NCBI RefSeq assembly: GCF_036588685.1
Contig: NC_086378.1
Span: forward strand, 26,970,001-27,034,000
Length of the DNA stretch: 64,000 nt
Direction of reading: 5' to 3'
DNA from: Mytilus trossulus
Lineage: Eukaryota
Shown: positions 1,603 to 36,662 of the stretch, in pieces
Layout of the letters: every line of letters starts with the position of its first letter
Position numbering within the stretch: position 1 is the stretch's first letter
Made by a program: the position numbers and the translations under genes
The notes under the pieces: model-generated
What the model was told of the DNA's origin: nothing
Seen by the model: only the letters and a program-made list of their open reading frames with translations
The model's database searches: none

Positions 1603-1920
1603 CGGAGGCGTCTATTAAAGTGTGTATGTGTTTGTAGATGGAGGCGTCTATCAAAGTGTATATGTGTTTGTAGATGGAGGCGTCTATTAAAGTGTATATG
1701 TGTTTGTAGATGGAGGCGTCTATTAAAGTGTATATGTGTTTGTAGATGGAGGCGTCTATTAAAGTGTATTTGTAGATGGAGGCGTCTATTAAAGTGTGTA
1801 TGTGTTTGTAAATGGAGGCGTCTATTATAGTGTATATGTGTTTATAGATCGAGGCGTCTATTAAAGTGTATATGTGTTTTTAGATGGAGGCGTCTATTAA
1901 AGTGTGTGTGTGTTTGTGAG
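1603..1920. repeat. 36-bp minisatellite, ~9 copies, inside the predicted 5'UTR intron of copy 1
   Basis: Unit TGGAGGCGTCTATTAAAGTGTATATGTGTTTGTAGA repeated head to tail; one unit is 30 bp. Confidence 0.95.
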
Positions 1921-3092
1921 TGTGTGAGAAAGAGATACATTTTCTGGAATCTTCGTAAATAAGTTCTTTTAAAATTGATTTGTATTAGAAGCACATAGAA
2001 TCGGCGAAAAAATAAAAAATGTTCAAAAATGTGTCTCGAAATCATCAAATCTAGAAATAAAATTTGATATGCGGATGATTAGTTAATATCCGTTTGAACG
2101 GGATAAAATATTAAATCTTGACTCAGTGTCACCGACTTCTTCCTTAATCTTGCATGTCGATACGTGAAAATGTAAGGTACATACAAGAAAAAGAATTACA
2201 CTTTATATAAAAACAAAAAGATACAATAAAGTAACACATAATGCTCGCTAGTACTAAAAGCAAGCTCAAAGTATCTTACCTGCCGATTCGAAAAAATATA
2301 TGACGGTTCTGGATGAAGACTTTGTATTTATACAATGTATCTTTTTGATATACATAAACAATAAGGATGATAACAAATTATCTGTTTATATTTGATCATT
2401 ATGGTGTAAAGACGTGTTTACTTAAGTCAGTGATATACACTATTTTTTGTTTATTTTTGAAATAACAAAATCACTATCAAAGTCAAATTATGTAATATAA
2501 GTGCAGTGACAGTACTGCTGTTGTTAATCAATTGATTGATGTTCGTTTCAGTACGTTTACAGCAATTGATTTTGTTCTTTTACTTTATCGTTTGTTTATT
2601 AATTTATGTTGCAATTTACTGAGTGTTTATCCTTGCACCAGGTGTATTTCACGTGGTTATTGACATATGACATCAACTTCCAAGCAAGGACCGAAGCTCA
2701 TAAACCTTGCCGTCATCGGTATTTTTGTTAAACGCAGGACTTCGGGAATGTCCGGAGAGCCGACAACCTTGCTTCGGAAGTTGATATGACATAAGTCCGC
2801 TGTTATTAGTCTACAGTTGTCATGCTGCTGATCTTTTCTTGTCAATACTTTACTTTTAATTAAAGCAAATTAAAGCACATTTAGTTTTTTCTTGTTATTA
2901 AATATGTAAGGTTTTTAAGCGTACGATGACCTATTATAGTTGTGTCATTTTGGCCTCCTGTGGAGAGTTGTCTAATTGGCAATCATACCCCCATCTTCTT
3001 ATTTATATTCATCCGGAATCTAAAATCTAATTTACGATAACATCATCGCTGCAAGACATACAGTACTAAACAAGATTTCAGAGAATAAGTAC

Positions 3093-3230
3093 GCCTGTAC
3101 CAAGTCAGGAATATGACAGTTCTTGTCTATTCGTTTTTGATGCGTTTTGTTATTTGATTTTGCCATGTGATTATGGACTTTCCGTATTGATTTTCCTCTG
3201 AGTTCAGTATTTTTGTGATTTTACTTTTTT
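3093..3230 (+). repeat. Interspersed repeat family B (CCTGTACCAAGTCAGGAATATGACAG...TTCAGTATTTTTGTGATTTTAC)
   Basis: Related copies at ~10800-10920, 17100-17235, 39450-39750 (interrupted) and 41600-41790. Confidence 0.75.
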
Positions 3231-3459
3231 CTTCAATATATTAATAAGATTTGAACAAAATTGCATATAACTTACTGACGATAAAATCGAAACATCCTTA
3301 TTATCACAGCCAATCGGATAATAAGATATGTGATTCTGTTCAATTAACATTTTGCTTTAAAATATTGCAATAATTTATCAAAATAATCAAGTCAAGGTTT
3401 ATCATTCCGCAGTTTAAGGTCTTTTTAAAGGATGGTTGTTTATTATGTGTTTATCAAAA

Positions 3460-3670
3460 TAAAAAGATGTGGTATGGTTCAGTGCCAATAAGACAACTTT
3501 GTACGAGAGTCCAAATGATATTTTCCTTCAACAATGAGCAAAACCCATACAGCATAATCAGCTATTTTTATAAAAGGCCCCGAAATGACAGATGTAAAAC
3601 AATTCAAACGAGAAACCCAAAGGATGATTTATGTTCAAAACTAAACACAAAAAAACAAATATAATATACG
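3460..3670 (+). repeat. Interspersed repeat family A, diverged copy
   Basis: AAGATGTGGTATG...GCCAAT...AAAAGGCCCCG...AAAACAATTCAAACGAGAAA, similar to 5046-5270. Confidence 0.8.
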
Positions 3671-4454
3671 GAAACAGATTTGACTTTTTGTCTGATAGAA
3701 TCCTATAGTTTTATACACGAGTGCCAATTGAATTTTTTCCCTCCAAACCCCTTTCATTCTTTTCATAATTTGTAACATATAATTCCAAATTCCTTTAAAA
3801 TTTGTTAAAATCGTATACAGTATTTGTATTTTTTTCATAGATTTTGATAGAAAATTGATTCAAATGTTTCCTGCCAAGTTTTCAGAAATCTTTTCAGTAC
3901 TTTTAAAGTTCCGTTATTTATATATAGTCTTTTAAAAGAAGGGCTTGTTTTTTTTTAAAACGGTAAAGTGAAAAATTCTTCAAATGTTTACGGGTGTGAC
4001 CTTAAAGCTTTAACAGCGAATTATTCAGTACATTTTATGGTAAATATATAATTTTGAGAGTCTCAAACTAACACGAACCCTGCTATATAGTGTTATCTAA
4101 ATCAAGCTTATAATATCTGATAGTAAATACATATGTTGCCAACTATAGGGTGATTGTAAGGAGTGTGTGAATAGATGTTACGTGTTGCTTTACAAATTCT
4201 TTAATATGTTGCAATGCAAACAACTGCAATATTGACAAAGTTCTTAACCGAATAGCAAAGTAAACTCGCTTATCTAATGTATTTCCTGATTACACGATGG
4301 AATGAGGTTCATCTCTTAAAACCATTCAATATTTCGATAGCTGACATTTTTTTTCGAAGAGAAACTGAATGAATTTCAAATACTCCTACCCGCTTAATGT
4401 ATTTGCTTCCCAAATTTTGCTTCATAAAAGATATATGCAAACAAACTAATTATT

Positions 4455-4659
4455 TTTTTTACATAAATAAGGCCGTTAGTCTTCTCGTTTGAATTGTTTT
4501 ATATTGTCTTATCGGGGCCTTTTATAGCTGACTATGCGGTATGGGCTTTGCTCATTGTTGAAGGCCGTACGGTGACCTATAGTTTTTAATGTTTGTGTCA
4601 TTTTGGTCTTTTGTGGATAGTTGTCTCATTGGCAATCATACCACATCTTCTTTTTTATA
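4455..4659 (-). repeat. Interspersed repeat family A (very abundant ~200-bp non-autonomous element)
   Basis: Near-identical to 61256-61443 and reverse complement of 5046-5270. Confidence 0.9.
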
Positions 4660-5045
4660 GGTTCGTATGGGAATTATTTTCTTCAATTGTATCACTGATA
4701 TTTATTTATAAATAAGTAACATAAGTTACCATGGACTGTTATACCTAGAAACATGTTTCAAACCCATATAGGTATTATTTTAAGATGCGATGAGGAGGTA
4801 GTTTGGTTTTGTTTAAAATATCCTACTTTAATAATAGTAATCTTTTTTTGTAAAGGTCAATCTTGTTGTAGTTTAGAGACCTTTTGCAATATTGGAAGTA
4901 AGATAAATGGTTAAACAATCATGATTTGATGCTATCAGAAACTATTTGAAATGAAAAATAGATTTAGCTTCTTTTTTTTGACACGATGGAATACAGTTAA
5001 CTTGTATAACAGGAAATAGCTCCATAAGTTCAAATTCAGGAGTCA

Positions 5046-5270
5046 TATAAAAAAGAAGATGTGGTATGATTGCCAATGAGACAACTATCCACAAAAGACC
5101 AAAATGACACAGACATTAACAACTATAGGTCACCGTACGGCCTTCAACGATGAGCAAACCCCATACCGCATAGCCAGCTATAAAAGGCCCCGATACATTG
5201 TAAGACAATGTAAAACAATTCAAACGAGAAAAAAATAAACGAAAAACAAATATGAAACACTTAAACAAAC
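5046..5270 (+). repeat. Interspersed repeat family A
   Basis: AAAAAAGAAGATGTGGTATGATTGCCAATGAGACAACTATCCACAAAAGACCAAAATGACAC... Confidence 0.9.
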
Positions 5271-6162
5271 GTCAGTATATCAGTGGTTTTCTTTGATTGC
5301 TCTCTGTCATAATTATTTTTTCGTTTTATATTGGTTTGTCATAAATTATGCTATTTGTATCACATTTTGTCAATTGGAGGGTTTTACAGCTGATCTTACG
5401 GCATTTATAACAGCCCTCTTTAATCTTTTAATTACACTTTCATTTTAAAGTGTCTGCAAATTTTGTGGTTTTGATCGTGAAATATGCACGGAACATAGAT
5501 AAACAAAAAAAATATCTATTTGCATTACATTTGACAAATTTCCGCCTTCCTGTTATCTGAGATTTCATGATTAAAAACTTTAAGTGTTTTACTTCAAATA
5601 ATTGTTTCTTATTATGAAACTTTGTTATTTTTCGAAAAACAATCATGTGTGTGATGTTTGTGAAATTGCATTTTTAAATGTTATACAGGAAAATAATTTC
5701 CCCGGATTTCCAAGTATTTGAAATTTCATGATAAAATCTTAGTTTATTAATCAGACACTGTACTTATATTTGTTCAATCAATTTTTGTATTCATATTCTA
5801 AAATTTTAAAGTTTTCATTGATTTGAAAGAAAAAAAATCCAATTTAATTCAATTTGAAACTAAGTTTATAATTCCAGAACTATTATCATAAATATTGAAA
5901 AATATAGTAAAAATGACAGATACAAATATTCTACATGGATGTGGGATGTTTAAAATGAATGCTTCTTCACATTTATACCAAATATCAATAGTGGTTTTCC
6001 TTCAACTCACAAACGTTAACACATTATTGACGGTCTCGTCTCTACAACTTAGTTGATGCGAGGCAAACGCTATCACTGCATGTTAGAGTTTGTCACTCAG
6101 AAAATTAGGATACTGCATATATGCAATGTAATGAATTGTGTATGTCCATACATGTATAAGTA

Positions 6163-6343
6163 TATAAAAAAAGATGTAATATAATTGCCAATGAGAAAAC
6201 TATTCACAAGCGACCAAAAAGACACAGCAATAAACAACTATAGGTCACCGTACGACCTTCAACCATGAGCTAAGCCCATTCCGCAAAGTAGTCTATAAAA
6301 GTCCCCAAAATGATAAATGTAAAACAATTCAAACGGGAAAACT
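6163..6343 (+). repeat. Interspersed repeat family A, diverged copy
   Basis: Shares ACAACTATAGGTCACCGTACG and AAAACAATTCAAACG blocks. Confidence 0.85.
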
Positions 6344-7359
6344 TACTATTTATTGTATTTATTAATTAATTAACTAGTATATTTATTTATTTATTATATA
6401 AGTTTTTTAGTTGAGAAACAAATTACAGAATATTAATACTTACTTGACTGAAAAGGAAATGGTCAAATCCGTCCATGTTTTACTGGAACAAATTAAGATA
6501 TAACCATTGATAGTGTATGATTGGAAAATTTTAACTTCCAACTACGATTATATTATGGTGAAGCCACCTTTATCGCCTCAAATAATTATTATTTCGCAAT
6601 TTTATCCTAGTAACATATTGTTCAGGAAGTTGATAAAGAAATTCTTTAGTCTCCGTCAGTTAATCTTATTTACATATGATTCGACAGGAGTGGTGACCAA
6701 ATTCACGACTGGCTTTATTCAAATTATTAGTGTGCAGAATTTAGAAACGAACATTGCACAATTACGCGATTATGATTATCACAAGTACATGTAAGATACA
6801 CAAACCTTATGTCAAAAGGTGACGAATAACTCTTATTTCAACTTAGTGCGGTGCATAACTACAAAACGGTCTCACAAGTTTGATATCAGCAATACAGGAA
6901 ATATATTCAGGCTAATTTCCTCAATACCTTACTATATTAAGTCATTGACATTTAACTGTCTTATCACATTATATTCAATACCAACAAGGATACGTAAGAT
7001 TTTTCAAACATTAGATTTTGAACAAAAAAATTTAATCTTCGCGTTATCATATTTATTCGTGATAATGAATTTGACCTTTCTTTGATCAGTACAAATGTAT
7101 ATCTTTATACGAGTATTTACTAGATGTCATTGGTTCACATTCAATACGTATATAGTGTCTGTTCCAACAAAAATCAATTGAGAAGATTATCGGGGGGAGG
7201 GGGAGGGACATACTAAGGAACCGAATGAACTCCAAAATGAACCAACAGAATAAGCGTCTATTGTTATGCACGCATCAGCAACAATACCAATCAACTATCA
7301 AGCAAACTGTCACAATCGAAAATTAAATAAAGACCCAACGGTTAATTGCTCACAGGAGT

Positions 7360-7516
7360 TTGACATCCTATCAAAACGGGGTAAAATATACAAAACTCGA
7401 CTATCACAGTAGAGCTTCGAGTTGAAATCCTATCACTAACGGCGTAAACATATATCAAACTCGACTATCACAGTAGAGCTTTTCTCGAAGAAACTGTGAT
7501 TGTCGAGTTTGGTATA
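7360..7516. repeat. ~62-bp direct repeat followed by a 24-bp-arm palindrome (possible Crypton-type end remnant)
   Basis: AAACTCGACTATCACAGTAGAGCTT twice; TATATCAAACTCGACTATCACAGT pairs with ACTGTGATTGTCGAGTTTGGTATA (2 mismatches). Confidence 0.6.
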
Positions 7517-7920
7517 ACGCACGATACTGGTGTCACCTAACGTTACACACCCAAAGACGTAAGACAAAATAAAAGCGTTGGAATGCATGTTGTTCAGATG
7601 GCTTTTAACAATTTTTTTTTTAAAAAAGGACTTGATTTTTTTCCCGAAGAAAGGATTTTTTTTCTTAGATAAAAGATGCTAAGCTTTAGATTTATTATCA
7701 AATCAAAAATAAAAAGTAACTTGAATTGAAACCATTTAGTTATATACATTTTAATTATAAAGGCAATCGATTTCTCAGGGTTTTTTATGGATAAACTATG
7801 CACTGCAAATGCATTCATTTTTGCACTCCAGAATGTCAAGGCGAGAGGACTACGGCATATCTAGCATGGCAGTTCTGCACAAATATATGCGAGGGAATTA
7901 GCGGGAACAATTATCATAGC

Positions 7921-8059
7921 GAGGGGGGATAGGAGAGGTCCTGATCCCGAAATCCCGGGCTTAAAACACGAAATCCCGAGGTCCCGAAAGGATCAATCCC
8001 GAAATCCCGTGCTTAAAAACAACCGATCCCGGAGTTCCGATAAAGATCATATCCCCCTC
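7921..8059. mobile_element. Small MITE-like element with internal ATCCCG repeats
   Basis: Imperfect terminal inverted repeat GAGGGGGGATA / TATCCCCCTC; GC-rich island with repeated GAAATCCCG. Confidence 0.55.
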
Positions 8060-11000
8060 TTTTTTTCTATTAATTTGTATTATAGCGGATCCGACTATTA
8101 TAGTCCGGAAAACACTTCAGTTCCGCGTGGAAATCTCTCTCACCCCTTCTTTCTGAATCGGTAGAGCTTCAACATAAAACATTAATTTTAACGGGTTTTT
8201 TTTATTAAGCAACAAAATAAAATAGCCGTATTCCAAATCGTCTGTGAAACCCGCAATCATTACAATTAGACGGAACGTTAGACGCATATTTTATTGAATA
8301 ACGTCAAAATCGTATGTGGGGACATTGTATCGGACATTTTAGTTTTATCCGATATCTCATATATTAGATTTAATTTATGGGAATTTAATATCAAAATAGA
8401 GATATTTTTTTGTACTTTTATCCATTATAATTTTTTCTTATGTAGCGAATGACACTGTATTAGATAAACATCACGAAAAAACAGAAAACAGAAAACGTAA
8501 CCCTAGTACGTTTAATTTGGTTTGAAGGGGACAAAATATCGGACATTGCTAATCAACTCGAATAAAAAGAATTTGTTTTAAACATTCCTGATTATTACAT
8601 GAGGCGAAAGTGTGATCTTTGTACAAAATACTAGTGTAAGAAGTATTTACTTTCGACATGGGGGTTGCTCTGGAATTCCCTTTTTCGGACAAATTAAAAA
8701 AAATTTACGGCAACCTTTTATGCATGGGACACATAATTTGTATCATCTTGATCCCTTTTTTTTTTTTTATATTTCCGTATTTTCGAGAGAGAGAAATCGA
8801 CATTACGTCATCGCCCACTTATAAATTGGTTGTTCTAGACACATTTTTATATCGTTTGGTAAAAACAAATTATATGTTTTTTACGGTATTCAGAATTTCA
8901 GAAAACTAAAAGTGTAACGCGGGACAAGGAAATCATATTGCAAACTAAAGGTTTTTATTGAATTTTAATTAATGAAAATGGTCTGTTACATATATAAAAT
9001 TGCAATAATCTGAAAGACGAGTTTTAAAGCTTTAAAATGATATACAACACTTTATAACATCATTTTTATGTTTGAAAATTAACTAGATGACTGTGGCTTG
9101 TCCGTGATTTCACCAAAGTAACACCAGTAGCGTGGTTTCATCATGATATAACTTTCTTTTCGTTATAAGGCTTAACGATTACCGTTATGCGTAGTAATTT
9201 GCACGGGTGGATTCACCCGTGCATACCTAAGCGGGAATTAATTCATTCGACGGTTTGCATTCAATCAGTCTACACGTTTAATTCAATTGCTGTTAAGGTC
9301 TGTTTGACTTTTATTTTGTTTTCGTTTTGAAACAAACGCAATTGTTGTTCTATAGGGGTTGTCTTTCACACGTATATTAAGATTATTCTTATAGAATTGT
9401 ACAATTCAGTAGATGCACATGTATACTGTACAGTATTTAATCAATTTTCTCTTTTCATTCAATTACATGTAGTTGTGAATTGTTTCTAATTTTTGTAATT
9501 ATATTTTGTAGATTGTTCAGGCTGTTGATCATACTTCTAGTGAAGAACATGTGATAAGGACTGTTTTTGGCGTAACACCCGCCATTCTAAATTTAGTTTT
9601 TTTTCACATGTTACTTATGTTCCGAATGTATTATTAAAAGACTGGATGCTGCAAACCTACATCCCATAGTATATTTGTGCGTTGTGTTATTAAGCCTAGT
9701 TGTATAGAAAAGAAATACTTTATGTTCGGTTGAACCCGTGAAAAAGAACTTAACTTGCTTTAATTAATACTCATAGGAGCACGGAAATTGACAAAAGGGC
9801 AGTGATCGGTCAGTATACTAGAGCCTCTTCAGCAGGATAAAATTATCAGCAATAGCCTTTTTAGAAAAGTTTTGTATGTTCAATGGCCAGGAAAACGAAA
9901 GCCGAAAGCGTTGAGTATTGGTCAAGTTTGACAGATCAACGAAGAATGTAGATGTAAGAATGTTATTTGGTTCTTTTATTGATTTTATCTGTTTTTAAAT
10001 AATAAAACTAATTTTTTAAAAAGAGTATATTTTGAGTAACCATATGCCTGATGAACAAATCAAAGCATAAAATTTGTTAAAAAAAGTTAACTTAATAATG
10101 GCCAAAAACGCTTTTCAAACCCCACCCCCCTTTTTTAACTCTGGATCCGCCAATGACATATAGTCTATGCGTAGTGACGGTAAGTTACATAGTGAGCTAG
10201 TGACCTTATACGATATATATGGGTTATTTTAAATTTTTAAATATATTTAATACAGTTCGTTGACTTTTTTTTTTAAATTTAAAACATGTTATTTAAAATA
10301 TTGTAGTAAATTAACTCAATAGTATTTATGTGTTATATCTAATCTAAATCAATGTCTCCACAACAGATCATGCAGATGTCATGCGAATAGAAACGGTTGC
10401 TAGGTCTCATGTATTTGATACGGTACCTTACTTCTTTTGATGCAAATTAACTATTCCATACGTTTAAATCTATCGAGCAAATCATGTTGAATTTTATATA
10501 GGTTTAAATAATTTTCACTTCGTACAAAGAAACGCCCAAACCTTTTTCAGAACGTATGCACTTGCCAACAAAATGGGCTTCAAAGTAAAGTGTCAGTCTT
10601 TAAATGTTTTTTGTTCCTTTTTCACAAAAGCTGCGAAACAACAACTAAACAATTACATTGTTAAATTTTGTTTAGGAAACCGAAAAAAAAAAATCCTTTA
10701 CTTTCAATCTATATCATTTAACCTGCCAGTGGCTAAAATTATGAAGTTATAAATAATTTAAACGAATCCATCATTTTCTACGCGCCAAGTGAATGGCTGT
10801 ACGTACCAAGTCAGGAATGGGACAGTTGTTTTCCATTCGTTTGATGCGTTTCACTTTACATTAATTTATTTGTGCAATTTGATGAGGGACTTTCCGTTTG
10901 GAATTTTACTTGGGATTCGGCATGCATGTTTGTTCATCAGTGATGCAAACGCATCTTGGACTTTTACTACACAATCTTATATGTGTGTTTCTCTTCGTTT

Positions 11001-11660: not shown

Positions 11661-11849
11661 CCCAAATTAACTTCCGTAGCATAGGAACAAAACTGTCATG
11701 TTGTGACTATCTAAAGACATCTAAATTGGTGTTCTTATCTTATATTGTAGGACAAGTCCAATGATATATTCTAATATGCAACAAATTTGACAAGCACGGT
11801 TATGACAAGAACAACTATAGTTTAAGAAACACTGAAGGAACAACATAAT

Positions 11850-14683
11850 TTGTTACTTACATGTTGTGTCGGTGACCTAATCAATATATATATATATATA
11901 TATGGGGTCAGTAAATTCCATATGGGCAGTTATCGAAGCTCAAAACCCGATATGAAATTTACTGACCTAATTTATATCATATTAGTCCACGAGACACCGT
12001 GTAACAACTTTATTTTGCTGACTATTTTTGTATGAGGTATTTAGACTATCAGCCTATCATAATGGTTATGTGTTTGATACTTAGTATTAAGAACCTACCA
12101 TTTGTCTACACAAAACAAATTCCAAAAATAAGAACTTATTAATTTAAATTTGTTTTATGAATTTATTTTAATTGTTCATTACTGGTTTGAAAGGGAAGTA
12201 ACTCCTTACTAACCCCATATGGTAATTAACCATATAGGGTATCTGTCTAACTGACCACATAATTTTTAGGACACCTTTTTTCCAATATACGTAGTCACCA
12301 CGTTAGTCATATAGGCAATCATGGCATTCCCATTAGTCCATATATATACGAGGTATAAGATAAATATGTATAATAGGTTCTTGAATTTAACATCGAAGAC
12401 ATGAGCACCTTGATAGGCCGCTAGTTTATAGATACATAACATGTGGTAGTCGGTAAGATAAACTCTTTCCGATTTAATTCAATATTTTTATTTAGGTCTA
12501 ATTTCTCAATAATATATAATACAACATGATTACATTTAGTTTAAAAAAAAATATAAAGAGTTTTTCTGTACAGAATTATAAGACTATAACATTTAAAACA
12601 TTATATAAAGAGTCCATCTATTATGAAACATATATATAGAAGAACATTACTTACAGTATATAACATTTCTACGTCTATTGAGCTTGGGTTATTGCTAAAA
12701 CTAATCCGAACTTCAGAGAAGGAGCTAAATATATTGTTGACCTATGTTCCGTCATCCGAAAATAAGAGTTGCCTCTCTTATGCAATAAATGTGGAAAGTT
12801 TTCTATAACACTATTGAGTATGTCATGTGTATGTGCGATCGTCTACCAGACTTAAGAGCGAAGCTTTGGGAGGACTTAATCAGTGTTAATCCGATTGTGT
12901 TCAGTGTGTATCTAGACAATCTAACGTCATCCACATTCACAGCAACTCTTTTGTCATGTTATACGGAATATGATCTGGATAATAATAACAGTATTTATTT
13001 TTCAAAAAGTTGTATTACACATGTTCAAAGAAATGTGCAGAGTTTTCTTTATAACAGTTAACTTTTCTTCAGAAGTATTATCAGTTCCTTTAAAGTAACA
13101 TTCAACCGATTCAATCACTCTAATTAATATGCGACATTCAAATTATTCAATCACTCTAATGTTTTGATCAATATGAAAATATAATTATTGTAAAAACATT
13201 GTTTAATACATGACAAATCTTCGACAAGAAGGAAATAAAGTTAATATATATTACATGCTTTGGCACAGCTACGAATCATATTGTAATCTGTAAATAAAAA
13301 CACTAACTTTTGTTTATCATCAAACACATAAAATCACCTTTAAACATGTGGTGCTTCGTCAACTATTTTGTTCTTTTAAAATTGTCATATAAAGGACACG
13401 ATAAAATAACATGGGCTTCATCTTCTAAAATATCCATACAATTATCACAGACTCGATCTTTTAAACTTTATTTTTCAAATCTCCCCGTTTGATAGGCCGC
13501 TAGTCTATCGATAAATAACACGTGGAAGTCGGTAAGATAAACTCTTAACGATTGAATTGAATTCAATATTTTTATTTAAGTCTCATTTCGCCTTAATATA
13601 TAATACAACATGATTACATTTAGTTTAAAAAATATATAGAGCTATCCTGTACAGAATTATAAGACCATAACATTTAAAACATATATATAGAAGAACATTA
13701 CTTACAGTATATAACATTTCTACGTCTATTGAGCTTGGGTTATTGCTAAAACTAATCCTAACTTCAGAGAAGGAGCTAAATATATTGTTGACCTATGTTC
13801 CATCATCCGAAAATAAGAGTTGCCTCTCTTATGCAATAAATGTGGAAAGTTTTTCTATAACATTATTGAGTATGTCATGTGTATGTGCGATCGTCTACCA
13901 GACTTAAGAGCGAAGCTTTGGGAGGACTTAATAAGTGTTAATCCGATTGTGTTCAGTGTGTATCTAGACAATTTAACGTCGTCCACATTCACAGCAACAC
14001 TTTTTTCATGTTATACGGAATATGATCTGGATAATGATAACAGTATTTATTTTTCAAAAAGTTGTATTACGCATGTTCAACGAATGTGCAGCGGTTTTTT
14101 TTATAACAGTTAACTAACTTTTCTTCAGAAGTATTATCATTTCCTTTAAAGTGACATTCAACCGATTCAATATTCGACATTCAAATCATTCAATTACTCT
14201 AATGTCTTGATCAATATGTAAATATTATTATTGTACAAACATTGTTTAATACATGACAAATCTTCGATAAGAAGGAAATAAAGTTAATATATATTACAGG
14301 CTTTGGCACAGCTACGAATCATATTATAATCTGTAAATAAAAACACTAATTTCTGTTTATCATCAAACACATAAAGTCATCTTTAAAAGTGTGTTGCTTT
14401 ATCAAATATTTTTTTTTCGTTTAAAATTGTCATATAAAGGACACGATAAAATGATATGGGCTTCATCTTCTAAAATATCCATACAATTATCACAGACTCG
14501 ATCTTTTAAACTTTATTTTCCAAATCTCCCCGTTTCGATTCTTAGTGGTGAACTACTACGATATACATAAAATTATATATGAGTCAGTAAATTCCGTATG
14601 GGGATTCGAGCTTCGGTCTCACCCCATTTGGAATTACTGGCCCCGTATATAGTGTATTATCTCACTTACACACCATGTAACTA
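11850..14683. mobile_element. Non-autonomous palindrome-ended DNA element (Crypton-like), 2.83 kb
   Basis: Termini TTGTTAC...GTAACTA flanked by ATAAT direct repeats (11845-49, 14684-88); terminal hairpins with core GTCAGTAAATTCC (11857-12004, ~14580-14645) in inverted orientation; empty site at ~25470 in the paralogous unit. Confidence 0.75.
12410..14535 (+). repeat. Tandem duplication (2 x ~1.07 kb) containing a degraded LINE-like ORF2 C-terminus
   Basis: Units start TTGATAGGCCGCTAGT at 12410 and 13489 and end CAAATCTCCCCGTTT; translation LCNKCGKFFYNIIEYVMCMC resembles a decayed LINE CCHC zinc knuckle. Confidence 0.8.
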
Positions 14684-15320
14684 ATAATATAAGGCATCCA
14701 CGAAATAAAAGATGAAGGTATAAAATAAATGGATAAAGACTTTGTAGCATGGTGAGCACTGATATTACTAGTATTTTATAATGTTATCAAACTTTGCAAT
14801 TGACCTGTATTTAATTTTGGACGTTCGTTATGCGGAAAACAGAAATTGCGATGAGAATGGAAGTTTGTATACTATGCTAAGGAAAAGTGAATTAAACACC
14901 AAGTGCTATATCAAACAAATTATCGGCAATTCGAACAATTTTCCCTTCAACATGCTGCCTTGTATTTTTTCTATGTCATGGACAGGCCCAGAATCTCGAC
15001 AATATTGGGCAATGCTGTCAATTAACAGTACATGAACTTCGCGCATGCTTGGTCATCTGCGTTGATTTATGAATAAAAGACTTCATGCAAATAATGCCAT
15101 ACAACCATACAACCGAGTTTTGTATATTTCCCACTTTATTGCATGTTCTTCACCAAATAATAGTGTTAAGACAAAATTGCAGAGAAAAAAGATAATGACA
15201 TATTGGTTTTTGATACTGACTTTATCAACAAAATAAATATATAGAATAAAACATTACTATCATGTTCAAAGATTTTACATTACAATTTATTAAAGTCGGC
15301 ATCTAAACAAATAGTAGACA

Positions 15321-17752: not shown

Positions 17753-19228
17753 TTATGGCAGTGTTAAATATAACACTGGAGCTTTTTATATTTCAGAAGG
17801 TAAAAGACCTTGTTTAAAAATGCATTGTATTGCATAGTTTCTGTTTTCCGTAGTTGGACCATTGTTCTTGACCTTCTGTTACTGTCAGACATGGTTTAAC
17901 TGACCTCAACCTAATTTCATGAATTAGTAATTAAGGTTGAGTTTGCCATTTGATTAGCGACTTTCCCCCTTTTGAATTTTCCGTGGAGTTAAGTATTTTT
18001 GTGAGTTTACTTTTTATAGTTGTATAGTAAGTTCCGTTTCTCAGATACTGTAAAAAAATATATCAACTATATTTTATGAATCGTATGATTGTAAGGTTTA
18101 ATTGAAAGTCTGGATAGTTTCATCTGATATTGACACTATTTAATACAGTTCATCAGTAAATGTTACGTTTTTGTGTTTTCGGTCTTGGGATTGGTTTTGG
18201 AAGGCGGCTTACTTATGTAGTAAGTTTTCGGTCTGCTTTATAAATAATAAGTGAACTATATTTGGTGATGGATAGCTTGGTAGATGTAAACATCTGTCTG
18301 ACAGGTATATTTTGTCCGTGACCCTATTTTCATAATGTATTATTAAAAATCAAATTTCAGTAGTTAGAACGTCTTTAAAGACGTTTCAAGCACTATGTCA
18401 ACTATATTTGGTGGTGTTTACAGTGTGTACATGTCTGTTTGCAAGGGTATATCTCACTTTAACTTCATGATTGTCGTGGTTCATTGATTATTGTTATGTT
18501 TCCCTGTTTCTTGGATACTATAAGCAAAACCTTAAATTATATTTGATGCATGCAATCAGGTGTTCAAGTCTGTCTGCTTATGTTCATCTAACCATGACCT
18601 ACACCATATGTTACGGTAACAGAAGTATATGGAATGCCATTGGTGAGGACTGTTCGTATTCTTGCATCGTGTATTCATAGACATTGCTTTTCACAGTTCT
18701 TAAATTATTTCTATATCATTGTCATTTTTGAACTTTTAAGCTATTATTTTTTTGGAATTTTTAACTTACTTTTATTTATTGATTATTTAGGAATTTTGTT
18801 TAGCGAATATTTTATGAAGTTTTAACTTATTTTTATTGGTACGGATTCAATATCTCCTTAATTTTATCATGACCATTTTGTATAAATTATATTATATTGT
18901 TTCATCAATGCAAATTTTGTCTGTTTTAAACATGGCCTGTCATATTTTATTGTTAATACTAATATATGTGAATGGATATATATTACAAAGTGCTTAGGGT
19001 AATTTTAATATTACATAATGCTCTGTTATAAATACTGTATAATAATAATAATATTCAATAGAGGTTTAGCTTATAAATGGGGCTTTGATGTAAAACTATG
19101 TCGAAATCGGAAGCAATGTCCATTATGATAAAGTCAGTGTATGTGTAACTATTAATGATGTGTGACAGTTTTTGAATAAATCTTTTAGTTGTACAAGACC
19201 ATGATTTTGTAATTCATGCGCCGAAAAA

Positions 19229-19350
19229 GGTGTATTATATGGTATTTGCCCTATATGATACATCATGTGTATTATATGGTATTTGCCCTATATGATACAT
19301 CATGTGTATTATATGGTATTTGCCCTATATGATACATCATGTGTATTATA
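19229..19350. repeat. 37-bp tandem repeat, ~3.3 copies
   Basis: GTGTATTATATGGTATTTGCCCTATATGATACATCAT, perfect copies. Confidence 0.95.
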
Positions 19351-21321
19351 ATGATATGCACCACATGCACTTACAACATATACATGTTAGGGATAGAGGC
19401 CTGTTAATTACGCGTTTATATTTTAACCCTTCTTGATAGATATATTTGCAATCAGCAGTTGTTTCTTAAGTGGCAAAATGGCATCTTTTTTTCAAAGGTG
19501 TAACACCAGAGTAATTAGATCTTGAACTTTCATACAACTGATTGGTAAACTAAGAACCACAGATCATTGTGTTCAAAATATGTTCGATATCCTATGGTCA
19601 TTCTGGAAACAAGTCTCGGTTATTGTATAGAAAGGTATATACTATGAAAATTAGAGCGCGGGGCTTTGCTCCAAGCTCTTATTTTCATAGTATATACCTT
19701 TCTATACAATATCCAATTTAGCACATATTTACAACTTGAGTAATCCTGTAATTAGTCTATTGATATGTTTTGGCTGACTGGATGTAGCTCATGTACAAAG
19801 TTTTGTAAATCTACTCACTATAATATCATTGTAAAAATGGGATTTCAAAAGGCGCTTGACTTTAGAATGTAAAGAAGGTAGCTGCTGTAAGTATGGTTAT
19901 TGGTTATAAAGCGTTGTTTTACTATACATGTACTTATTTACATGGAAAGATGACAAAATGAATTGACCAAGAGCAGACAATTCTAAAATTGCAGTGACAG
20001 CTTTACATTCTTGAAAACATTTCTTAATTTCACATAAAACCTAAAACTATCTTGAAAATGCGTTTGAATGAGTACAAACAGTTGGACCCCCCTTCCACAT
20101 CTTTGGATGAAACACCTTTTAAAAATGGCTGGATCTACCCCTGGTATGTACCCATAGGTAGTCTAGTGAATAGTTTATATGCATGAAATATTTGTCACTA
20201 GACATTAGGCAACCAATTATCGACCAATTTATGACTAAATATATCAAATTGCTTTATTAATAATTTCCATTCAAAAGATTCACGGTTGACTCTTTTTGTG
20301 TACAAATTAATTGCATGGAAGATAAAGGATTACAAATTTTAGATTGAGTTGTACTTTAATCAAGGTATAAAGCACCATAATTATTACTCTTTATTTTAAT
20401 GAAAGAAACTTTTTTAATTGTCAAAACAAAATTTAGATAAAAAAAAAATGATTAATAGGATGTTAAAAATCTGTTTGAAAACTAATTACAAACTATTTAG
20501 TTAATTTGGAACACAGAATTTAATATTTCAAAATAGCCAGTAGCAATTTTTGTTCTAATATCTTGATTACAATACAATGAAATCTTACCCTTGTGTTCAT
20601 TCATGCGTAGTTACTTAGTACACGGACAAAGTATGTACTATGAAAATTAGAAGGCAAATTCAAGCAATTTGATTGGACGAGAAGTTGTAAGTATGTGCTA
20701 ATTATTTAATCATTATCGTTAGAACATACTCACCTCTCCTCGTCCAATCAAAAGTGTCGATTTGAGACACTAATTTTCATAGTACATGGTCAAACCATGT
20801 TCTATATTTCGTCACGCACAATTAACTTTGTATTGTACACAAGTATCTGCTAAATGTGAATACTTTTTAAGGATCAATAGGTAATTACAAACAAGCAGGT
20901 CAAATTCTGGTTCTACTTTAAAAAAAGTATGTCCATGCAATTATTTCACCCTTAAGCCATTCAAACAATTAAAATTTACCAACAGAAACAATAATTATTT
21001 CTCTATATACGCTTCCATTTTTCATTTAAATGGATACAAGTACTTTTCATTTACAACCTGAAATCATTTATTTCATTAAAATTTTAATTTGACACTCTAT
21101 GAAAATTTGAATTTTTCACCGAAAAGATTAGTGGAGATGCTTGAAATCATAAGAAATTGAAGGAATCTTCAATGAGTAAATCTATAAGTTTTAAATATAC
21201 AATCATAATAATAGTATAACTTCAATCATCTATTTATTGAGGATTTCCAATAAAGAACATGAGTCTCACAAACACATAGTTTTAAAAGATTAAAGGTAAC
21301 AATTTGAAAGTTAATTGTATT

Positions 21322-23206
21322 TTACATGTCAAATGACATAACCTTGCCATCGAAAGAGACAACTTTCAAACGCTTTACGCTCTTGGGTACATGAATGATC
21401 AATTCGTTTTCATCATTGTTGGACTGCACTTTTTGGTCCGTCGGGCGCGAACAAGATACATTGCTAATTGTCGGTATATTTTCCTTGTCATCAGATACAG
21501 TTGGGCGAGGGGGTTGTAATGCGTTACTTATATTTCTGCTCATTTCTGTGCTCTGTCTTTTGTATGTCTCTACTGCGTTACTACGATGACCACTGCGTGA
21601 TTTTACGGCCGAATCATCAAAACCACTATTGTATAGGGTTGTCACACACGAAACCTTTCCTGAATGGTTTGAAATATTGCGGTTTGAACAGTCTATTCCT
21701 GCTTTATCAAACATAAGTTTAATGTATGTAGACAGTTTATTGACGCCAATGACTTGGGCAGAAAATTTAGTTCCCTCGTTTTTCAAACTCATTTTCCCGA
21801 TTGGCCTTCTGTAAAATGGCCCTTCACTCGGAACATATTTCAAATATGTGCTAAACAGTTTAACAATGTCTCTTGGGTTTGAAGTATCTTCCCAGTGGGT
21901 TATTTGCTTTGGTTCAATTTTGCGGTGGTTGATTCCCCCTTGCACATTTTTGGATACCCTCCCGAAAAATTTCAAACAGCGTTTGTTTTGCGTATAATCA
22001 ATAAGAATTTTGTACTGTGAGACATCTAAATCTCTGTGCTCATCCATTCCTCGGAAACCGAACAGTTTACAATTGTAATAAAACACTGCAAAACTTAGAC
22101 CCTCAGATGTCGTCATGCTAAAAATTCCTTTCTCCCATAAGATCTTTTCATCATCAATAGATACGGGGTCTGCCCTCTTCTTATGAATTCCTACCAAAAA
22201 TTAAAAAAAAGATATCAGAAAAATAAAGAAAACTTGATTTGAAATCCTTTTGTGAAAAGGGGGGTGTATTAAGGTTTCCCCAAATACCAATGGGATATCA
22301 AACAAATACAGTTTTGAAAATTTTAAGAAAAATAGAAATCATCATTAAATATATAAATTCGGCAAACATCAAGTGTACATTGTTACTTAGATAAAGAGTT
22401 GTCTCATTGTCCCTCAAACCACATCTTCTCATACCTATAAGAGTAAATGTTTTTGAAAAACTATAATTACGATATATGAATAAAACAAGCATGCACTCTC
22501 AACAAGATAGTATGTCACTGCTTTTTCTCTCAATTTTGTTTTAAAAATTGGATCGCATCTTGAATGTGCTTGTAATACTTCTCACTGGAAGTTTGGCGAC
22601 ATTATTGATTTTTGATGTCATAGCGTAGAATTTGTCTTTATCTTTTTCATTTATAATACATTTTTTTTAAATTGACTTACCAATACCATCATGTGTTAAT
22701 TCTTTCATTCTTGCATCTAATGCCTTCTGAAACGTCGAAAACGTGGAGGTATTTTTTGGCAAAAAAAATATTTCAGGACGACCATTCTCTCTTAGGTAAC
22801 GCTGTAGTCCATTTGTCAAGTTCATGAGTGTATTAGGTGGATATGGCGACCCATCCTCGCGCCTGCATTCCATTATAAACCTAGACATCCAAAAGTCAAT
22901 CTGCGGTAAATCTGCAGATTGTATCTCAACCGGAACACATGTATAGTGTTCAGTAGCAGTTATAGGATTACAGTTTCTATTTTCAGCCCATGTTTGCCAA
23001 ACATTTACACTCCAGTTTGTAGAACTTTTAGTTTTTGCTGGTATTCTGTCACTTATGCGCTTTTCAAACTCTGTGGTTGAAACTGGATTTGAAAATCTAT
23101 TGTTATTGTCACTAAAAACCAACTGTTGAGTTTGAATTAAATCCAAATCTTCTAGTTCCCATTCGGTATCGTGTTTTGAAATTATTTGAAAATCAGGCAA
23201 ATCCAT
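21322..23206 (-). CDS. Crypton tyrosine recombinase (DUF3504/ZMYM-QRICH1-like), 2 exons: 23206..22681 and 22190..21322, ~464 aa
   Basis: GT-AG intron 22191..22680 (ATTG|GTAAGT ... TTTTGGTAG|GA) joins DGI-G-IHKKRADP in frame. Motifs: RREDGSPYPPNTL, LQRYLRE, FGFRGMDEH (Arg), SKNVQGG (Lys), NHSGK, SGHRS, VETY (Tyr). An in-frame GTG at 23224 is an alternative start. Confidence 0.9.
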
Positions 23207-23384
23207 ACTTTCTAACTCAGCCACTTTTACTTGTTTACAACTCGCATATCAAACTGTGTTTAAACACACAAACATTTTTGTGATTACAACTAACCACCAT
23301 TTTTGTTCTCTTTATTTTACTAGAATTGTTTAGTTGGATTATATAAATATTGTTCACTCAATTCTTGACCATAGCTATAACATA

Positions 23385-23665
23385 ATGCTTTTGATAAATC
23401 ATTAAGATGATTGCAAAGAAAGGCTAGCTTGATTACGATGATTGATTTTAATCATTGCTTGATTACTATGATTGTTTTTAATCATTTAGATGATTGCAAA
23501 GAAAGGATAGCTTGATAACAATGATTGATTTTAATCATTTAAATCATAGCTTGATTACTATGATTGTTTTAAATCATTTGAATGACTATAGTTTGATTAA
23601 AATGATTGATTTTAATCATTTCAATACTTTGTAATGTACTATAATTATTTTTAGTTATTTGATTG
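23385..23665. repeat. Degenerate ~30-bp repeats upstream of the Crypton ORF
   Basis: Repeated AGCTTGATTACTATGATTGATTTTAATCATT and GATGATTGCAAAGAAAGG units. Confidence 0.75.
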
Positions 23666-24271
23666 ATTGCATCGTCAATTACCAGCTAGGTATCAGTGTA
23701 GTAAACTTTTTTTCATTCTTATATGCACTTTTGAAAGGACAATTTTTACTCTTTTGAGAGAATGTCAAAATAAATTGCAAAGTTAATATTCTAAAATGTT
23801 CATACATTTTTTTTATATTTTCACAACAAAATGCTACATTAATTCATCTTGTAAATACATTAATTCATTTTGTAAATCAGTGACTTGCCTAAAGCTTTTA
23901 CACTAATGACATTAAACTTATATTGATAGAAGAAGTCTAATTGTATTACTTGGAGAGGTGAATATGTTCTAAATTGGTCAGACAATACTTGCTCATGTTT
24001 TATGAACATTTAAAGCCCTCGGCTTCGCCTTGGGCTTTAAATGTTCATAAAACATGAGCAAGTATGGTCTAACCTATAAGTAAAAAATAATTAAACATGT
24101 TCGAGTTAATTGAATTCTTCAGAGTGTCACATTTACAAAAAAATCAGTGTCCAACGGCATATCTCCAGAATAACTACATAGTGGTTAAACAATTTGAGTA
24201 CTACCACGAATGAATACGTAACAAATACAGAACAAAATACTATCCTGGATGAAAAATACCAGAAACAAATA

Positions 24272-25023
24272 CTGTGAAAGTACTTTTATTCGTGGGGTAC
24301 CAATTTTCGTGGTTTCGTGGATGACTTTATCCACGAATTTGAGTGTCCAACGAAATAATACAACCATTATCCAAATCACGACATAGAAAGATCCCCATCG
24401 GTAGGTTTGACTACTGATATGATCTAGAGAATATATTGAATAACGCCAAATCTGATAATTCTTTAATAGCAGTCTCAGAACTACAACTGCATGCAGGATT
24501 ATACCCATTTAATCTTTAACAACCTAAACTGTACAACTTTTGATATTTGAAACCTCATAAAAAATAATTTTGATCGATGAAAGTCAGATTTCCGATTTTG
24601 ATATGCTAGTATGATAAAGTGTTCATTTTATATCCTCATAGTTCTCGTAATTATGGGAAATATTAATTTCATGCTGGGCTTGATAATAATTATTTGACAA
24701 TTCAAGATACGTTTTAAGCATTTGTTAATGTTACTGTTTTCCAAAGGTGGCATGTTTATGGCCTAATTAACACCTTTGATGGTCTTTACTCTGTTGATCA
24801 CTTCATCATGGCTTAATCGGTGTTATTACTACGATTTACACGGGTCAATGTTCACTTTACAATTTCCTTCAATCCAGACTATGTGTAACCTTCGTTTCTA
24901 AATGCTTAAATTTTCATTTTTTTATTTTAGAAAACTAAAATCCACGAATTTAAAAACCCACGAACATGTAAACATTGCTCAAACCACGAAAATTGATACC
25001 CACGAATTAAAGTACTTTCACAG
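24272..25023. mobile_element. MITE with TA target duplication (Tc1/mariner-type inferred)
   Basis: TIR CTGTGAAAGTACTTT(T/A)ATTCGTGGG at both ends; TA at 24270-71 and 25024-25. Confidence 0.85.
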
Positions 25024-36534: not shown

Positions 36535-36662
36535 TAAATATAGAATAACCATATATTGTCTCGAAATATCAATGCTTAGAATAGCCTCGCTTTTTACCCA
36601 TTCCTAAGCCTTGTACAAATAATATTGATATTTCGAGACAATTTACGGTTATTCTGTATTTA
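36535..36662. repeat. Isolated palindrome with 39-bp arms (possible Crypton-type end or mini-element)
   Basis: TAAATATAGAATAACCATATATTGTCTCGAAATATCAAT vs reverse complement TAAATACAGAATAACCGTAAATTGTCTCGAAATATCAAT (3 mismatches). Confidence 0.75.

What the first reader, a model, noticed from the sequence alone, without database searches (positions are those of the whole stretch)
19611..24081. Intact spliced Crypton with hairpin ends and defined boundaries
Seen: an uninterrupted two-exon tyrosine-recombinase ORF bracketed by two different large hairpins. The left has 37-bp arms with 1 mismatch (19621-19711); the right has 43-bp arms with 2 mismatches (23976-24074). Each is flanked on its inner side by the same subterminal inverted repeat, and the ends read AAGT-NNN-GGTTA ... 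TAACC-NNN-AAGT. Known: Cryptons are YR DNA transposons proposed to move via circular intermediates and to leave short direct repeats. Inference: a recently active, possibly autonomous copy whose cis sites can be read directly.
Basis: partly seen in the sequence, partly recalled or inferred. Interest (0 to 1): 0.8.

Follow-up and report, generated by a model that had tools for sequence, protein, structure and literature searches.

The report
Two abutting mussel Cryptons, one-sided palindromes
The stretch holds two neighbouring mobile elements, not one: a short gene-less element and an intact tyrosine-recombinase (Crypton) transposon, each carrying a large palindrome at one end only, a layout not in the usual description of Cryptons.

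Summary
The hairpins, the subterminal repeat and the open two-exon recombinase gene are all present. The unit is misread. Window 19613-20701 is a 1.09-kb non-autonomous repeat (family A). It stands alone, without ORF or right hairpin, in 22 of 25 copies aligned. The gene-bearing Crypton (B) is 20719-24079, with the same left end in 3 of 3 copies. It starts with a TTAGAACATAC inverted repeat inside an 86-nt end module. It ends with the inverted repeat, 3 nt and a roughly 105-nt palindrome.

A 0.9-kb non-autonomous family (C) shares only those two ends with B. Some C pairs are up to 99.8% identical at different loci. DNA after the palindrome end reads N-T-A-R-A, mimicking the element's own TTAGA start. 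This fits the Goodwin model of Crypton integration by short homology.

The same one-sided-palindrome layout recurs in four further recombinase lineages (43-65% identical). The recombinase carries Lys at the second catalytic Arg. B is the only copy of its family without stops in this assembly.

I saw no circle junction, empty site or spliced read. This scan had already noted the same architecture on other DNA of this genome (s1-820628, s1-820500). I class it as a new variant of a known kind.

The parts
19613..20701 (-). Element A: a 1.09-kb non-autonomous Crypton derivative. Its canonical orientation is the minus strand, with the module end at 20701 and the palindrome end at 19613.
   Evidence: At least 37 scored copies at 88-95% identity. 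25 were aligned: the right end is sharp at ...GTATGTGCTAA and the left end is at GTCTCGG. It shares only its first 131 nt (95%) and last 140 nt (86%) with an autonomous 3.25-kb element on C4, L061:1629-4882.
19618..19714 (.). A-type terminal palindrome (47-nt arms).
   Evidence: z = -14.6. The same palindrome lies next to the A-type autonomous gene in L061 (I4/I5).
19718..19737 (+). A sub-palindrome inverted repeat, TTAGCACATATTTACAACTT.
   Evidence: It pairs with 20682-20701, 20 nt at 95% (I10).
20615..20701 (-). A end module (87 nt), bounded by inverted TTAG-N-ACA motifs. Its outer inverted repeat is 20682-20701.
   Evidence: It is homologous (75-85%) to the B module (and I3/I4).
20702..20718 (.). 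17-bp spacer between the two elements' module ends, which lie head to head.
   Evidence: Both families' homology stops at its edges. This arrangement was not seen in the other 24 A loci, 2 B loci or 29 palindrome loci examined.
20719..24079 (+). Element B: a 3,361-bp autonomous-type Crypton. It is the only copy of its family without stops in this assembly.
   Evidence: The left end is identical in 3 of 3 copies, each with a different flank. The right end is fixed by 28 aligned palindrome ends.
20719..20804 (+). B end module (86 nt). The terminal inverted repeat TTAGAACATACTCACCTCTCC is 20719-20739, and the inner inverted motif CATGTTCTA is 20796-20804.
   Evidence: I7: 20719-20739 against 23952-23972, 21 nt, 95%. 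The first 72 nt are shared at 82% with family C.
21322..22190 (-). Exon 2 (including the stop codon): the DUF3504 / tyrosine-recombinase catalytic domain.
   Evidence: Pfam PF12012 at 1.8e-15. PF00589 at 5.9e-4, below its cut-off.
22191..22680 (-). Intron (GT..AG), at a position conserved in paralogs.
   Evidence: Frame read. P0001 spans the joint. The same split is seen in L061 and L062 genes. Run X3 has contigs on the exons only.
22681..23206 (-). Exon 1, starting at the ATG at 23206: the QRICH1-type N-terminal domain.
   Evidence: Pfam PF25561 at 5.7e-15. P0001 starts MDLPDF.
23365..23666 (.). Degenerate tandem repeats upstream of the gene (units of about 30-83 bp). Their role is unknown.
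   Evidence: D1, D3-D5. Also present in the C42 copy.
23952..23972 (+). B sub-palindrome inverted repeat, GGAGAGGTGAATATGTTCTAA.
   Evidence: I7.
23973..24079 (.). B-type terminal palindrome (51-nt arms) and the element's 3' end, ...CCTATAA.
   Evidence: z = -14.4. At least 40 scored copies genome-wide, from 349 first-look candidates. Covariation is shown.
24080..24084 (+). Target-derived pseudo-repeat GTAAA, which mimics the element's 5' TTAGA.
   Evidence: In family C the flank after CCTATAA reads N, T 21/23, A 19/23, G or A 20/23, A 19/23.

Best explanation
The finding covers two related but separate tyrosine-recombinase (Crypton-type) elements. Their 'module' ends lie head to head, 17 bp apart.

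Both elements share one architecture. The 5' end is an 86-87-nt module that begins with a roughly 20-bp inverted repeat, TTAG-N-ACATAC. The 3' end is the same repeat inverted, then 3-5 nt, then a roughly 100-nt imperfect palindrome that is the true terminus. The gene, where present, reads from the palindrome side towards the module.

Element B (20719-24079) encodes the recombinase. Element A (19613-20701) is a gene-less derivative of a sister element.

Inferred mechanism, which is not shown here. The element leaves as a circle, or pairs as a tandem, in which the palindrome end abuts the TTAGA start. The recombinase, bound to the inverted repeats on either side of the palindrome, exchanges strands at the ...TATAA|TTAGA... 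border. Its partner is a genomic site reading A-W-N-T-A-R-A. Integration therefore leaves the element's TTAGA at one side and the target's NTARA at the other. This is the Goodwin model for Cryptons.

The palindrome and the module are the cis-required parts, because they are all that the non-autonomous families keep.
For: Shown:
- Family A stands alone in 22 of 25 aligned copies and has sharp ends.
- B's left end is at 20719 in 3 of 3 copies, each with an unrelated flank.
- 23 of 29 loci fetched with the B-type palindrome are a roughly 0.9-kb family C with the B-type TTAGAACATAC start.
- C shares only 72 nt (82%) and 122 nt (94%) with B. A shares only 131 nt (95%) and 140 nt (86%) with its autonomous partner on C4.
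- C pairs at different loci reach 99.8% identity (L040/L049, with different flanks).
- The flank after the 3' end mimics the 5' TTAGA. In C it reads N, T 21/23, A 19/23, R 20/23, A 19/23. In A, T is 16/17 and A is 13/17.
- Five loci carry the exact tail-to-head joint CCTATAA|TTAGCACATAC. In run X13, contig 11 starts at 20719 and is preceded by 48 letters, 43 of which lie on the palindrome.
- The palindrome-upstream-of-gene layout recurs in the C4 (65%), C14 and C12 (46-52%) and C8 (43%) paralog lineages, each with a different palindrome sequence.
- Within B-type palindromes 98.5% of cells pair, 3 pairs change on both sides and one indel is paired. The covariation score exceeds 500 of 500 shuffles.
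- The recombinase keeps Arg47, Lys81, His176, His202 and Tyr210.

From papers (passages read):
- Active Chlamydomonas CryptonF-1 'terminates in CACCG and targeted CAYCG' (PMC9977147).
Against: - No circle junction, excision footprint or empty site was seen. The tail-to-head joints could be tandem copies or an old composite.
- The other three B copies are 89-93% identical and carry 5-11 stops. Recent movement of B itself is therefore unproven.
- C's 5' module is only 82% like B's, so C's true helper may be another element.
- The second catalytic Arg is Lys in this protein and in 13 of 16 aligned homologs.
- No laid contig shows the 22681>22190 splice joint. Three of four runs cover the intron, and the 'RNA' labels are guesses.
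- The head-to-head spacing of 17 bp between A and B is far too close for chance, and this model does not explain it.
Confidence: 0.75

Rival explanations
1. One reading: one 4.47-kb Crypton, 19611-24081, bracketed by two different hairpins, with the internal palindrome at 20616-20804 acting as a DIRS-like internal complementary region.
For: Both palindromes and the shared subterminal repeat are present. The two halves of the internal palindrome match the two outer subterminal repeats (I7 and I10).
Against: Only the window itself matches the whole 4,471 bases. Positions 1-1091 form their own family. The ORF part starts at 1109 in all other copies. The internal palindrome is the meeting of the two families' ends, with unrelated sequence beyond each end at other loci.
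Confidence: 0.03
2. The window gene is a domesticated or immobile host gene: a single intact copy with an altered active site that merely sits among Crypton-derived repeats.
For: It is the only copy of its family without stops. It has Lys at the Arg-II position. NCBI annotates it as a gene. The intron position is conserved across paralogs. Domesticated DUF3504 genes are known (PMC3212892, passages).
Against: It lies exactly between the same two termini that bound the broken B copies and family C at unrelated loci. Tyr, both His and Arg-I are kept, whereas the vertebrate domesticated genes lost Tyr (PMC3212892). Contigs of other samples show B's 5' end against other flanks (loose ends at 20719). 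The Lys variant is shared by the A-type autonomous element, whose derivatives reach 97.9% pairwise identity.
Confidence: 0.1
3. The palindrome is not a recombination site. It would instead be a promoter, terminator or replication-related structure, or a by-product of inverted duplication of module sequence.
For: It lies upstream of the gene in all five lineages, about 120 nt before the ATG in the C8 units. The arms of the A-type palindrome are 92% identical to a 24-nt stretch of the A module (D16), which suggests origin by inverted duplication.
Against: Gene-less families A and C keep the palindrome, and it forms their terminus. Its complementarity is maintained through two-sided changes. The element's end lies at its outer base in every copy.
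Confidence: 0.1

Closest known systems
Animal CryptonA elements (Kojima & Jurka 2011, PMC3212892; passages read)
   Same: It is a DNA element encoding only a tyrosine recombinase, of the DUF3504/QRICH1-related kind. It has non-autonomous derivatives that outnumber the autonomous copy.
   Different: [quoted passage not shown] Here there are 20-bp inverted repeats, an 86-nt end module and a roughly 100-nt terminal palindrome. The Arg-II position holds Lys.
Goodwin model / active CryptonF-1_cRei of Chlamydomonas (PMC9977147; passages read)
   Same: A short sequence at one terminus resembles the target: CACCG/CAYCG there, TTAGA/NTARA here. The rearrangements and inverted copies at Crypton sites reported there resemble the inverted C4 pair and the rearranged C42 copy here.
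   Different: It belongs to a different Crypton group (F). The passages read describe no palindrome or inverted repeats. Movement was observed directly there, but not here.
Integron gene cassettes and attC sites (recalled knowledge, not from a call)
   Same: The topology matches. The unit begins with the remainder of a core site and ends with the inverse core plus an imperfect palindrome of about 60-140 nt. The crossover is at the edge of the core. Units can lie head to tail. One strand folds slightly better.
   Different: Integrons are bacterial and use an IntI integrase. Use of a folded single strand is proven there and only conjectured here. Here the unit carries its own recombinase.
DIRS1-type retrotransposons
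   Same: They use a tyrosine recombinase. Their terminal and internal complementary sequences are proposed to form a circle joint.
   Different: There is no reverse transcriptase or RNase H here. The apparent internal complementary region is the joint between two elements.
QRICH1 / ZMYM2-4 (domesticated Crypton-derived genes); QRICH1 structure 9hjt
   Same: QRICH1 is the best solved-structure match (E 1e-18). The same two Pfam domains are found.
   Different: According to PMC3212892, those genes lost the catalytic Tyr and the second Arg. This protein keeps Tyr210 and sits inside a mobile unit.

Membership tests
Crypton (tyrosine-recombinase DNA transposon), CryptonA/DUF3504 clade | Encodes a tyrosine recombinase and no reverse transcriptase or other transposase | tested here: met
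   The only ORFs of 100 aa or more in 19000-24700 are the two exons and one 107-aa ORF outside the element at 24185-24508, which was not scanned. Pfam gives QRICH1 domain, DUF3504 and a weak Phage_integrase hit only.
Crypton (tyrosine-recombinase DNA transposon), CryptonA/DUF3504 clade | The recombinase is related to CryptonA/DUF3504 proteins | tested here: met
   PF12012 at 1.8e-15 and PF25561 at 5.7e-15. 139 homologs were found, many named ZMYM2-like/QRICH1. QRICH1 is the best PDB hit. No phylogenetic tree was built.
Crypton (tyrosine-recombinase DNA transposon), CryptonA/DUF3504 clade | Complete catalytic tetrad R-H-R-Y | tested here: inconclusive
   Arg47, His176 and Tyr210 are present (exon-2 numbering), as are Lys81 and His202. 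The second Arg is Lys179, which aligns to the Arg of the HxxR motif of XerA. K is found in 13 of 16 aligned sequences and R in 3 of 16.
Crypton (tyrosine-recombinase DNA transposon), CryptonA/DUF3504 clade | A short direct repeat or microhomology between one terminus and the insertion site, with no true target-site duplication | tested here: met
   The 5' TTAGA is invariant, while the flank after the 3' end reads N-T-A-R-A (C: 21, 19, 20 and 19 of 23; A: T 16/17 and A 13/17). A TSD is excluded because the left copy never varies with the right one.
Crypton (tyrosine-recombinase DNA transposon), CryptonA/DUF3504 clade | No terminal inverted or long repeats (the published descriptor for animal Cryptons) | tested here: not met
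   There are 20-21-bp inverted repeats and a roughly 100-nt terminal palindrome. This is the respect in which it is a variant. The descriptor is a published observation, not a mechanistic requirement.
Crypton (tyrosine-recombinase DNA transposon), CryptonA/DUF3504 clade | Excision as a circle and reintegration | not testable with these tools
   Only tail-to-head joints were seen. These cannot separate circles from tandem copies.
DIRS-like retrotransposon | Reverse transcriptase / RNase H, plus an internal complementary region matching both ends of one element | tested here: not met
   There is no RT domain. The internal palindrome is the junction between families A and B.
Helitron/Helentron (elements with a 3' hairpin) | Rep/helicase protein and a short subterminal hairpin before a CTRR end | tested here: not met
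   There is no Rep or helicase. The palindrome is about 100 nt and terminal, and the ends read TTAG.../...TATAA.
Integron cassette / attC (analogy, not membership) | Recombination of a folded single strand of the palindrome | not testable with these tools
   There is only a consistent small bias. The strand that reads from the outer end towards the inverted repeat folds 1.2-2.3 kcal/mol better in 5 of 5 palindrome types.

The most novel reading that the evidence does not exclude
This mussel Crypton clade recombines through a structured site. In the circle, the two inverted repeats flank the palindrome. The palindrome folds out, either as a cruciform or as a hairpin on the better-folding strand. 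That brings the repeats together around an 8-nt spacer (ATT...TATAA), so the recombinase exchanges one strand pair at the TATAA|TTAGA edge. This would be a eukaryotic counterpart of integron attC or CTX-phage single-strand recombination. New palindromes would arise from head-to-head module pairs such as the A/B joint in this window.
Probability: 0.2. Interest if true: 0.85.

Novelty: new variant of a known kind. Interest (0 to 1): 0.6.

Why it matters
Crypton ends have long been called hard to define. [quoted passage not shown] Here the ends, the target preference and the minimal cis parts (an 86-nt module plus an inverted repeat and palindrome) can be read from dozens of copies. There are two autonomous/non-autonomous pairs and one intact recombinase gene.

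That makes a direct test of Crypton mechanics practical, by combining a mini-element with the 464-aa protein. It also raises a testable question: does a eukaryotic tyrosine recombinase use a folded DNA site? In addition, mussel repeat libraries probably hold families A and C as unclassified MITE-like repeats. They can now be assigned.

Tried and rejected
- **True target-site duplication.** Rejected. The left TTAGA is invariant and forms part of the inverted repeat, while the right copy varies.
Rejected.
- **Hairpin-telomere / resolvase idea.** Rejected. An integrated element with a whole palindrome at only one end does not fit a linear form with closed ends.
- **Helitron-like 3' hairpin.** Rejected.
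- **Rfam scan of 19000-24700.** It gave 0 matches.
- **Splice joint and empty sites in public runs.** No 22681>22190 joint was seen, and no contig bridges the A/B joint or skips an element. Only the exon-only pattern of X3 is usable, and its RNA label is a guess.
- **The 22294-22428 depth spike.** I suspected a nested insertion. The C42 copy has the same segment at 90%, and only its last 53 nt or so recur elsewhere, so it is not one.
- **Literature.**
  - Crypton + hairpin gave 45 papers, of which 30 were listed. I read passages of two. Neither ties a hairpin to Cryptons.
  - Crypton + Mytilus + non-autonomous gave 2 papers, neither on mussel Crypton ends by its title.
  - Searches listed nothing on Crypton palindromes.
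  - Supplements are closed. The Crypton sequences in Additional file 1 of PMC3212892, and Repbase entries, could hold similar ends that I could not see.
- **Steps I did not take.** I built no tree, predicted no structure and ran no large representative protein search, because the family scans settled the protein.


Full report
**What is in the sequence.**
The arms are 19618-19664/19668-19714 (47 nt, 89%) and 23973-24023/24027-24077 (51 nt, 90%).
- They are two of only four such structures in the 64-kb window. They fold far better than shuffles: z = -14.6 and -14.4, with 0 of 200 shuffles as good.
- Just inside each lies a shared 20-nt inverted repeat (I13).
- On the minus strand two ORFs join in frame over a GT..AG intron, 22680-22191.
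- I scanned the exons apart and did not join them. Exon 1 matches the QRICH1 domain (PF25561, 5.7e-15). Exon 2 matches DUF3504 (PF12012, 1.8e-15) and, below its cut-off, Phage_integrase.
- A word search with exon 2 found a 464-aa NCBI protein of Mytilus trossulus, 100% identical over all of exon 2. Its sequence runs straight across the proposed splice.
- The organism is therefore a mussel. NCBI's independently annotated gene model (LOC134722460) uses the same splice.

**The unit is two elements.**
- A search of the window's own 1.3-Gb assembly with the whole 4,471 bases matched the full length only at the window itself.
- Query positions 1-1091 (window 19611-20701) matched at least 37 other places at 88-95%.
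- The ORF part matched only three other places, and there it begins at query 1109 (window 20719).
- I mapped the parts on 30 loci and aligned 25 copies with their flanks. The left part, family A, ends sharply at ...GTATGTGCTAA (20701) and at GTCTCGG (19613).
- 22 of the 25 A copies have no ORF sequence or right-type palindrome within 1.5 kb.
- The ORF element, B, begins with TTAGAACATAC at 20719 in all 3 copies, with three unrelated left flanks.
- The 'internal palindrome' at 20616-20804 is therefore the two families' homologous end modules lying head to head, 17 bp apart.

**The other end of B.**
- The right palindrome with 15 nt of the inner repeat (window 23958-24079) has at least 40 scored copies, from 349 first-look candidates.
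- Of 29 loci fetched, 23 are a 0.63-1.26-kb family, C, with a median length of 916 bp. Each starts with B's TTAGAACATAC and ends with this palindrome. The other six had no such 5' end upstream of the palindrome in the piece held.
- C shares only its first 72 nt (82%) and last 122 nt (94%) with B.
- All copies end at ...CCTATAA, so B is 20719-24079.
- C pairs at different loci, with different flanks, are up to 99.8% identical. The median over 253 pairs is 88.4%. Something has therefore moved B-type ends very recently.
- Family A has a pairwise median of 94.6%. Its best pair with distinct flanks reaches 97.9%.

**A sister autonomous element.**
- The nearest intact paralog (65% protein identity) lies on C4.
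- It carries the A-type palindrome and TTAGCACATA repeat upstream of a two-exon gene. It ends in an 85-nt module (L061:1629-4882).
- Family A shares only 131 nt (95%) and 140 nt (86%) with it.
- This gives two autonomous/non-autonomous pairs. In each, only the module end and the repeat-plus-palindrome end are kept. That is the usual sign of cis-required sequences.

**The layout is general.**
- Two paralogs at 46% and 52% protein identity (C14, L063:3041-6720; C12, L064:2220-4632) begin with TTAGAACATAG and an approximately 85-nt module. They end with ATATGTTCTAA, 3 nt and a palindrome with 30-34-nt arms.
- A 43% paralog on C8 forms 100% identical 3,661-bp tandem units. Each has one palindrome with 70-nt arms about 120 nt before the ATG.
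- In all five lineages the palindrome lies on the gene's upstream side, and the palindrome sequences differ.
- Among 28 B-type palindromes (11 distinct) 98.5% of cells pair, three pairs changed on both sides, and one single-base indel is matched in the other arm. The covariation score beats 500 of 500 shuffles.
- Related copies inflate such scores, so I count this as support, not proof.

**Target and joints.**
- After CCTATAA the flank of family C reads N (A9/T10/G4), T 21/23, A 19/23, G or A 20/23, A 19/23. The left flank is only weakly A/T-biased.
- For family A, 17 copies with distinct flanks were scored. Six of the 25 were dropped by my strict pattern but visibly follow the same rule. T is 16/17 and A is 13/17.
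- The flank thus imitates the element's own invariant TTAGA start.
- This is the pattern of the Goodwin model, and of the active Chlamydomonas CryptonF-1, which 'terminates in CACCG and targeted CAYCG' (PMC9977147, passages).
- Five loci (at least four independent places) carry the exact joint CCTATAA|TTAGCACATAC, a C element sitting directly on the 5' end of an A element. This is what a recombinase that recognises a resident end would produce.
- In run X13, contig 11 starts at 20719 and is preceded by 48 letters, 43 of which lie on the palindrome.

**The protein.**
- I aligned exon 2 with 15 homologs and compared the profile with XerA.
- Exon 2 keeps Arg47, Lys81, His176, His202 and Tyr210. 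It has Lys179 where the HxxR arginine should be.
- 13 of the 16 aligned sequences have Lys there and 3 have Arg.
- The vertebrate domesticated relatives lost the tyrosine (PMC3212892, passages). This protein did not.
- In this assembly it is the only copy of its family without stops. The C42, C7 and C14 copies have 5-11 stops in their main matches.

**Expression.**
- Only Logan contigs could be laid, and the 'RNA' labels are guesses.
- Three runs cover the intron and look like DNA.
- Run X3 has contigs on 21217-22174 and 22680-23180 only. One of these stops at the exon-1 boundary. Depth is near zero on the rest of the intron, apart from a bin holding a widespread repeat, and on most other non-coding parts of B.
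- That pattern fits a spliced transcript, but no contig shows the joint itself.

**Strand bias.** In 5 of 5 palindrome types the strand that reads from the outer end towards the inverted repeat folds better by 1.2-2.3 kcal/mol. This is the gene's sense strand. The effect is small but consistent.

**Comparison with what is known.**
- A 2022 curation guide gives a short terminal direct repeat as the only distinguishing feature.
- My searches listed no paper describing a Crypton with a terminal palindrome. Supplements and Repbase were not visible to me.
- Two earlier follow-ups of this scan (s1-820628, s1-820500) reported the same hairpin-ended Crypton design on other pieces of this genome, with an attC-like reading. 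I reached the same topology from this locus, but it is not an independent discovery.

**Unexplained.**
- The A/B module ends are 17 bp apart. With at most 1,665 A-like candidates in 1.3 Gb, I estimate the chance of such a meeting at about 5e-5 per B copy (my arithmetic).
- The C4 locus is a 100% identical inverted pair sharing one module, with a further module after the second palindrome. It may be an assembly fold-back.
- The C42 copy of B has its left flank and first 24 nt re-joined to the palindrome loop.
- Such rearrangements resemble the Crypton-mediated inversions reported in Chlamydomonas. They are not explained here.

**Verdict.** The true object is an intact Crypton of 3,361 bp with one terminal palindrome, lying against a non-autonomous cousin.

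Noticed in passing
window 11845-14688 (ends near 11896-11977 and 14585-14650): Another element with hairpins at both ends. The arms read GGGGTCAGTAAATTCCATATGGG and are of a different sequence type, without the TTAG-N-ACAT repeat.
   Followed up: partly
window 36535-36662: A palindrome with 39-nt arms (92%) and a 50-nt loop. I did not examine it.
   Followed up: no
window 19230-19350: A 37-bp unit repeated in tandem with 100% identity, seen as three overlapping 47-nt copies, just left of element A (D2).
   Followed up: no
L061 (G000:C4:955500-965000) 1629-8120: Two copies of the A-type autonomous Crypton form a 100% identical inverted pair with 3.2-kb arms. They share a single 85-nt module, a poly-C/poly-G tract lies in each arm, and an extra module follows the second palindrome. 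This is either a real recombinase-made inversion dimer or an assembly fold-back.
   Followed up: partly
L002 3125-3580 (G000:C42, 3' end of the broken B copy): The left arm of the palindrome is interrupted. About 350 bp later, a duplicate of this copy's left flank (at least 60 bp) plus the first 24 nt of B is joined to the palindrome loop and right arm. The joint shows a TCG microhomology.
   Followed up: partly
L062 (G000:C8:8979500-8989499): Tandem 3,661-bp units of a 43%-identical Crypton lineage, 100% identical to each other. Palindromes of three units lie in the 10-kb piece, and one search lists three gene copies. Each unit has a two-exon gene and one palindrome with 70-nt arms.
   Followed up: partly
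window 22376-22428 (inside the intron): A stretch of about 53 nt recurs in unrelated loci. It gives a depth spike of up to about 18,000 in public contigs. It is probably a fragment of a very abundant short repeat.
   Followed up: partly
window 21844-21854 (minus strand, inside exon 2): A fifth exact match to TTAGNACATAY lies inside the coding region. It may be chance, or a site for the recombinase within its own gene.
   Followed up: no
window 20740-20752, 20668-20680, 23973-23977 and 19713-19717: A CCAAT/ATTGG motif sits at a fixed distance from the inverted repeats. It appears in both modules (TCGTCCAATCAAA) and directly beside both palindromes. It is also kept in the C14 and C12 lineage modules as GACCAATGAAA.
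   Followed up: no
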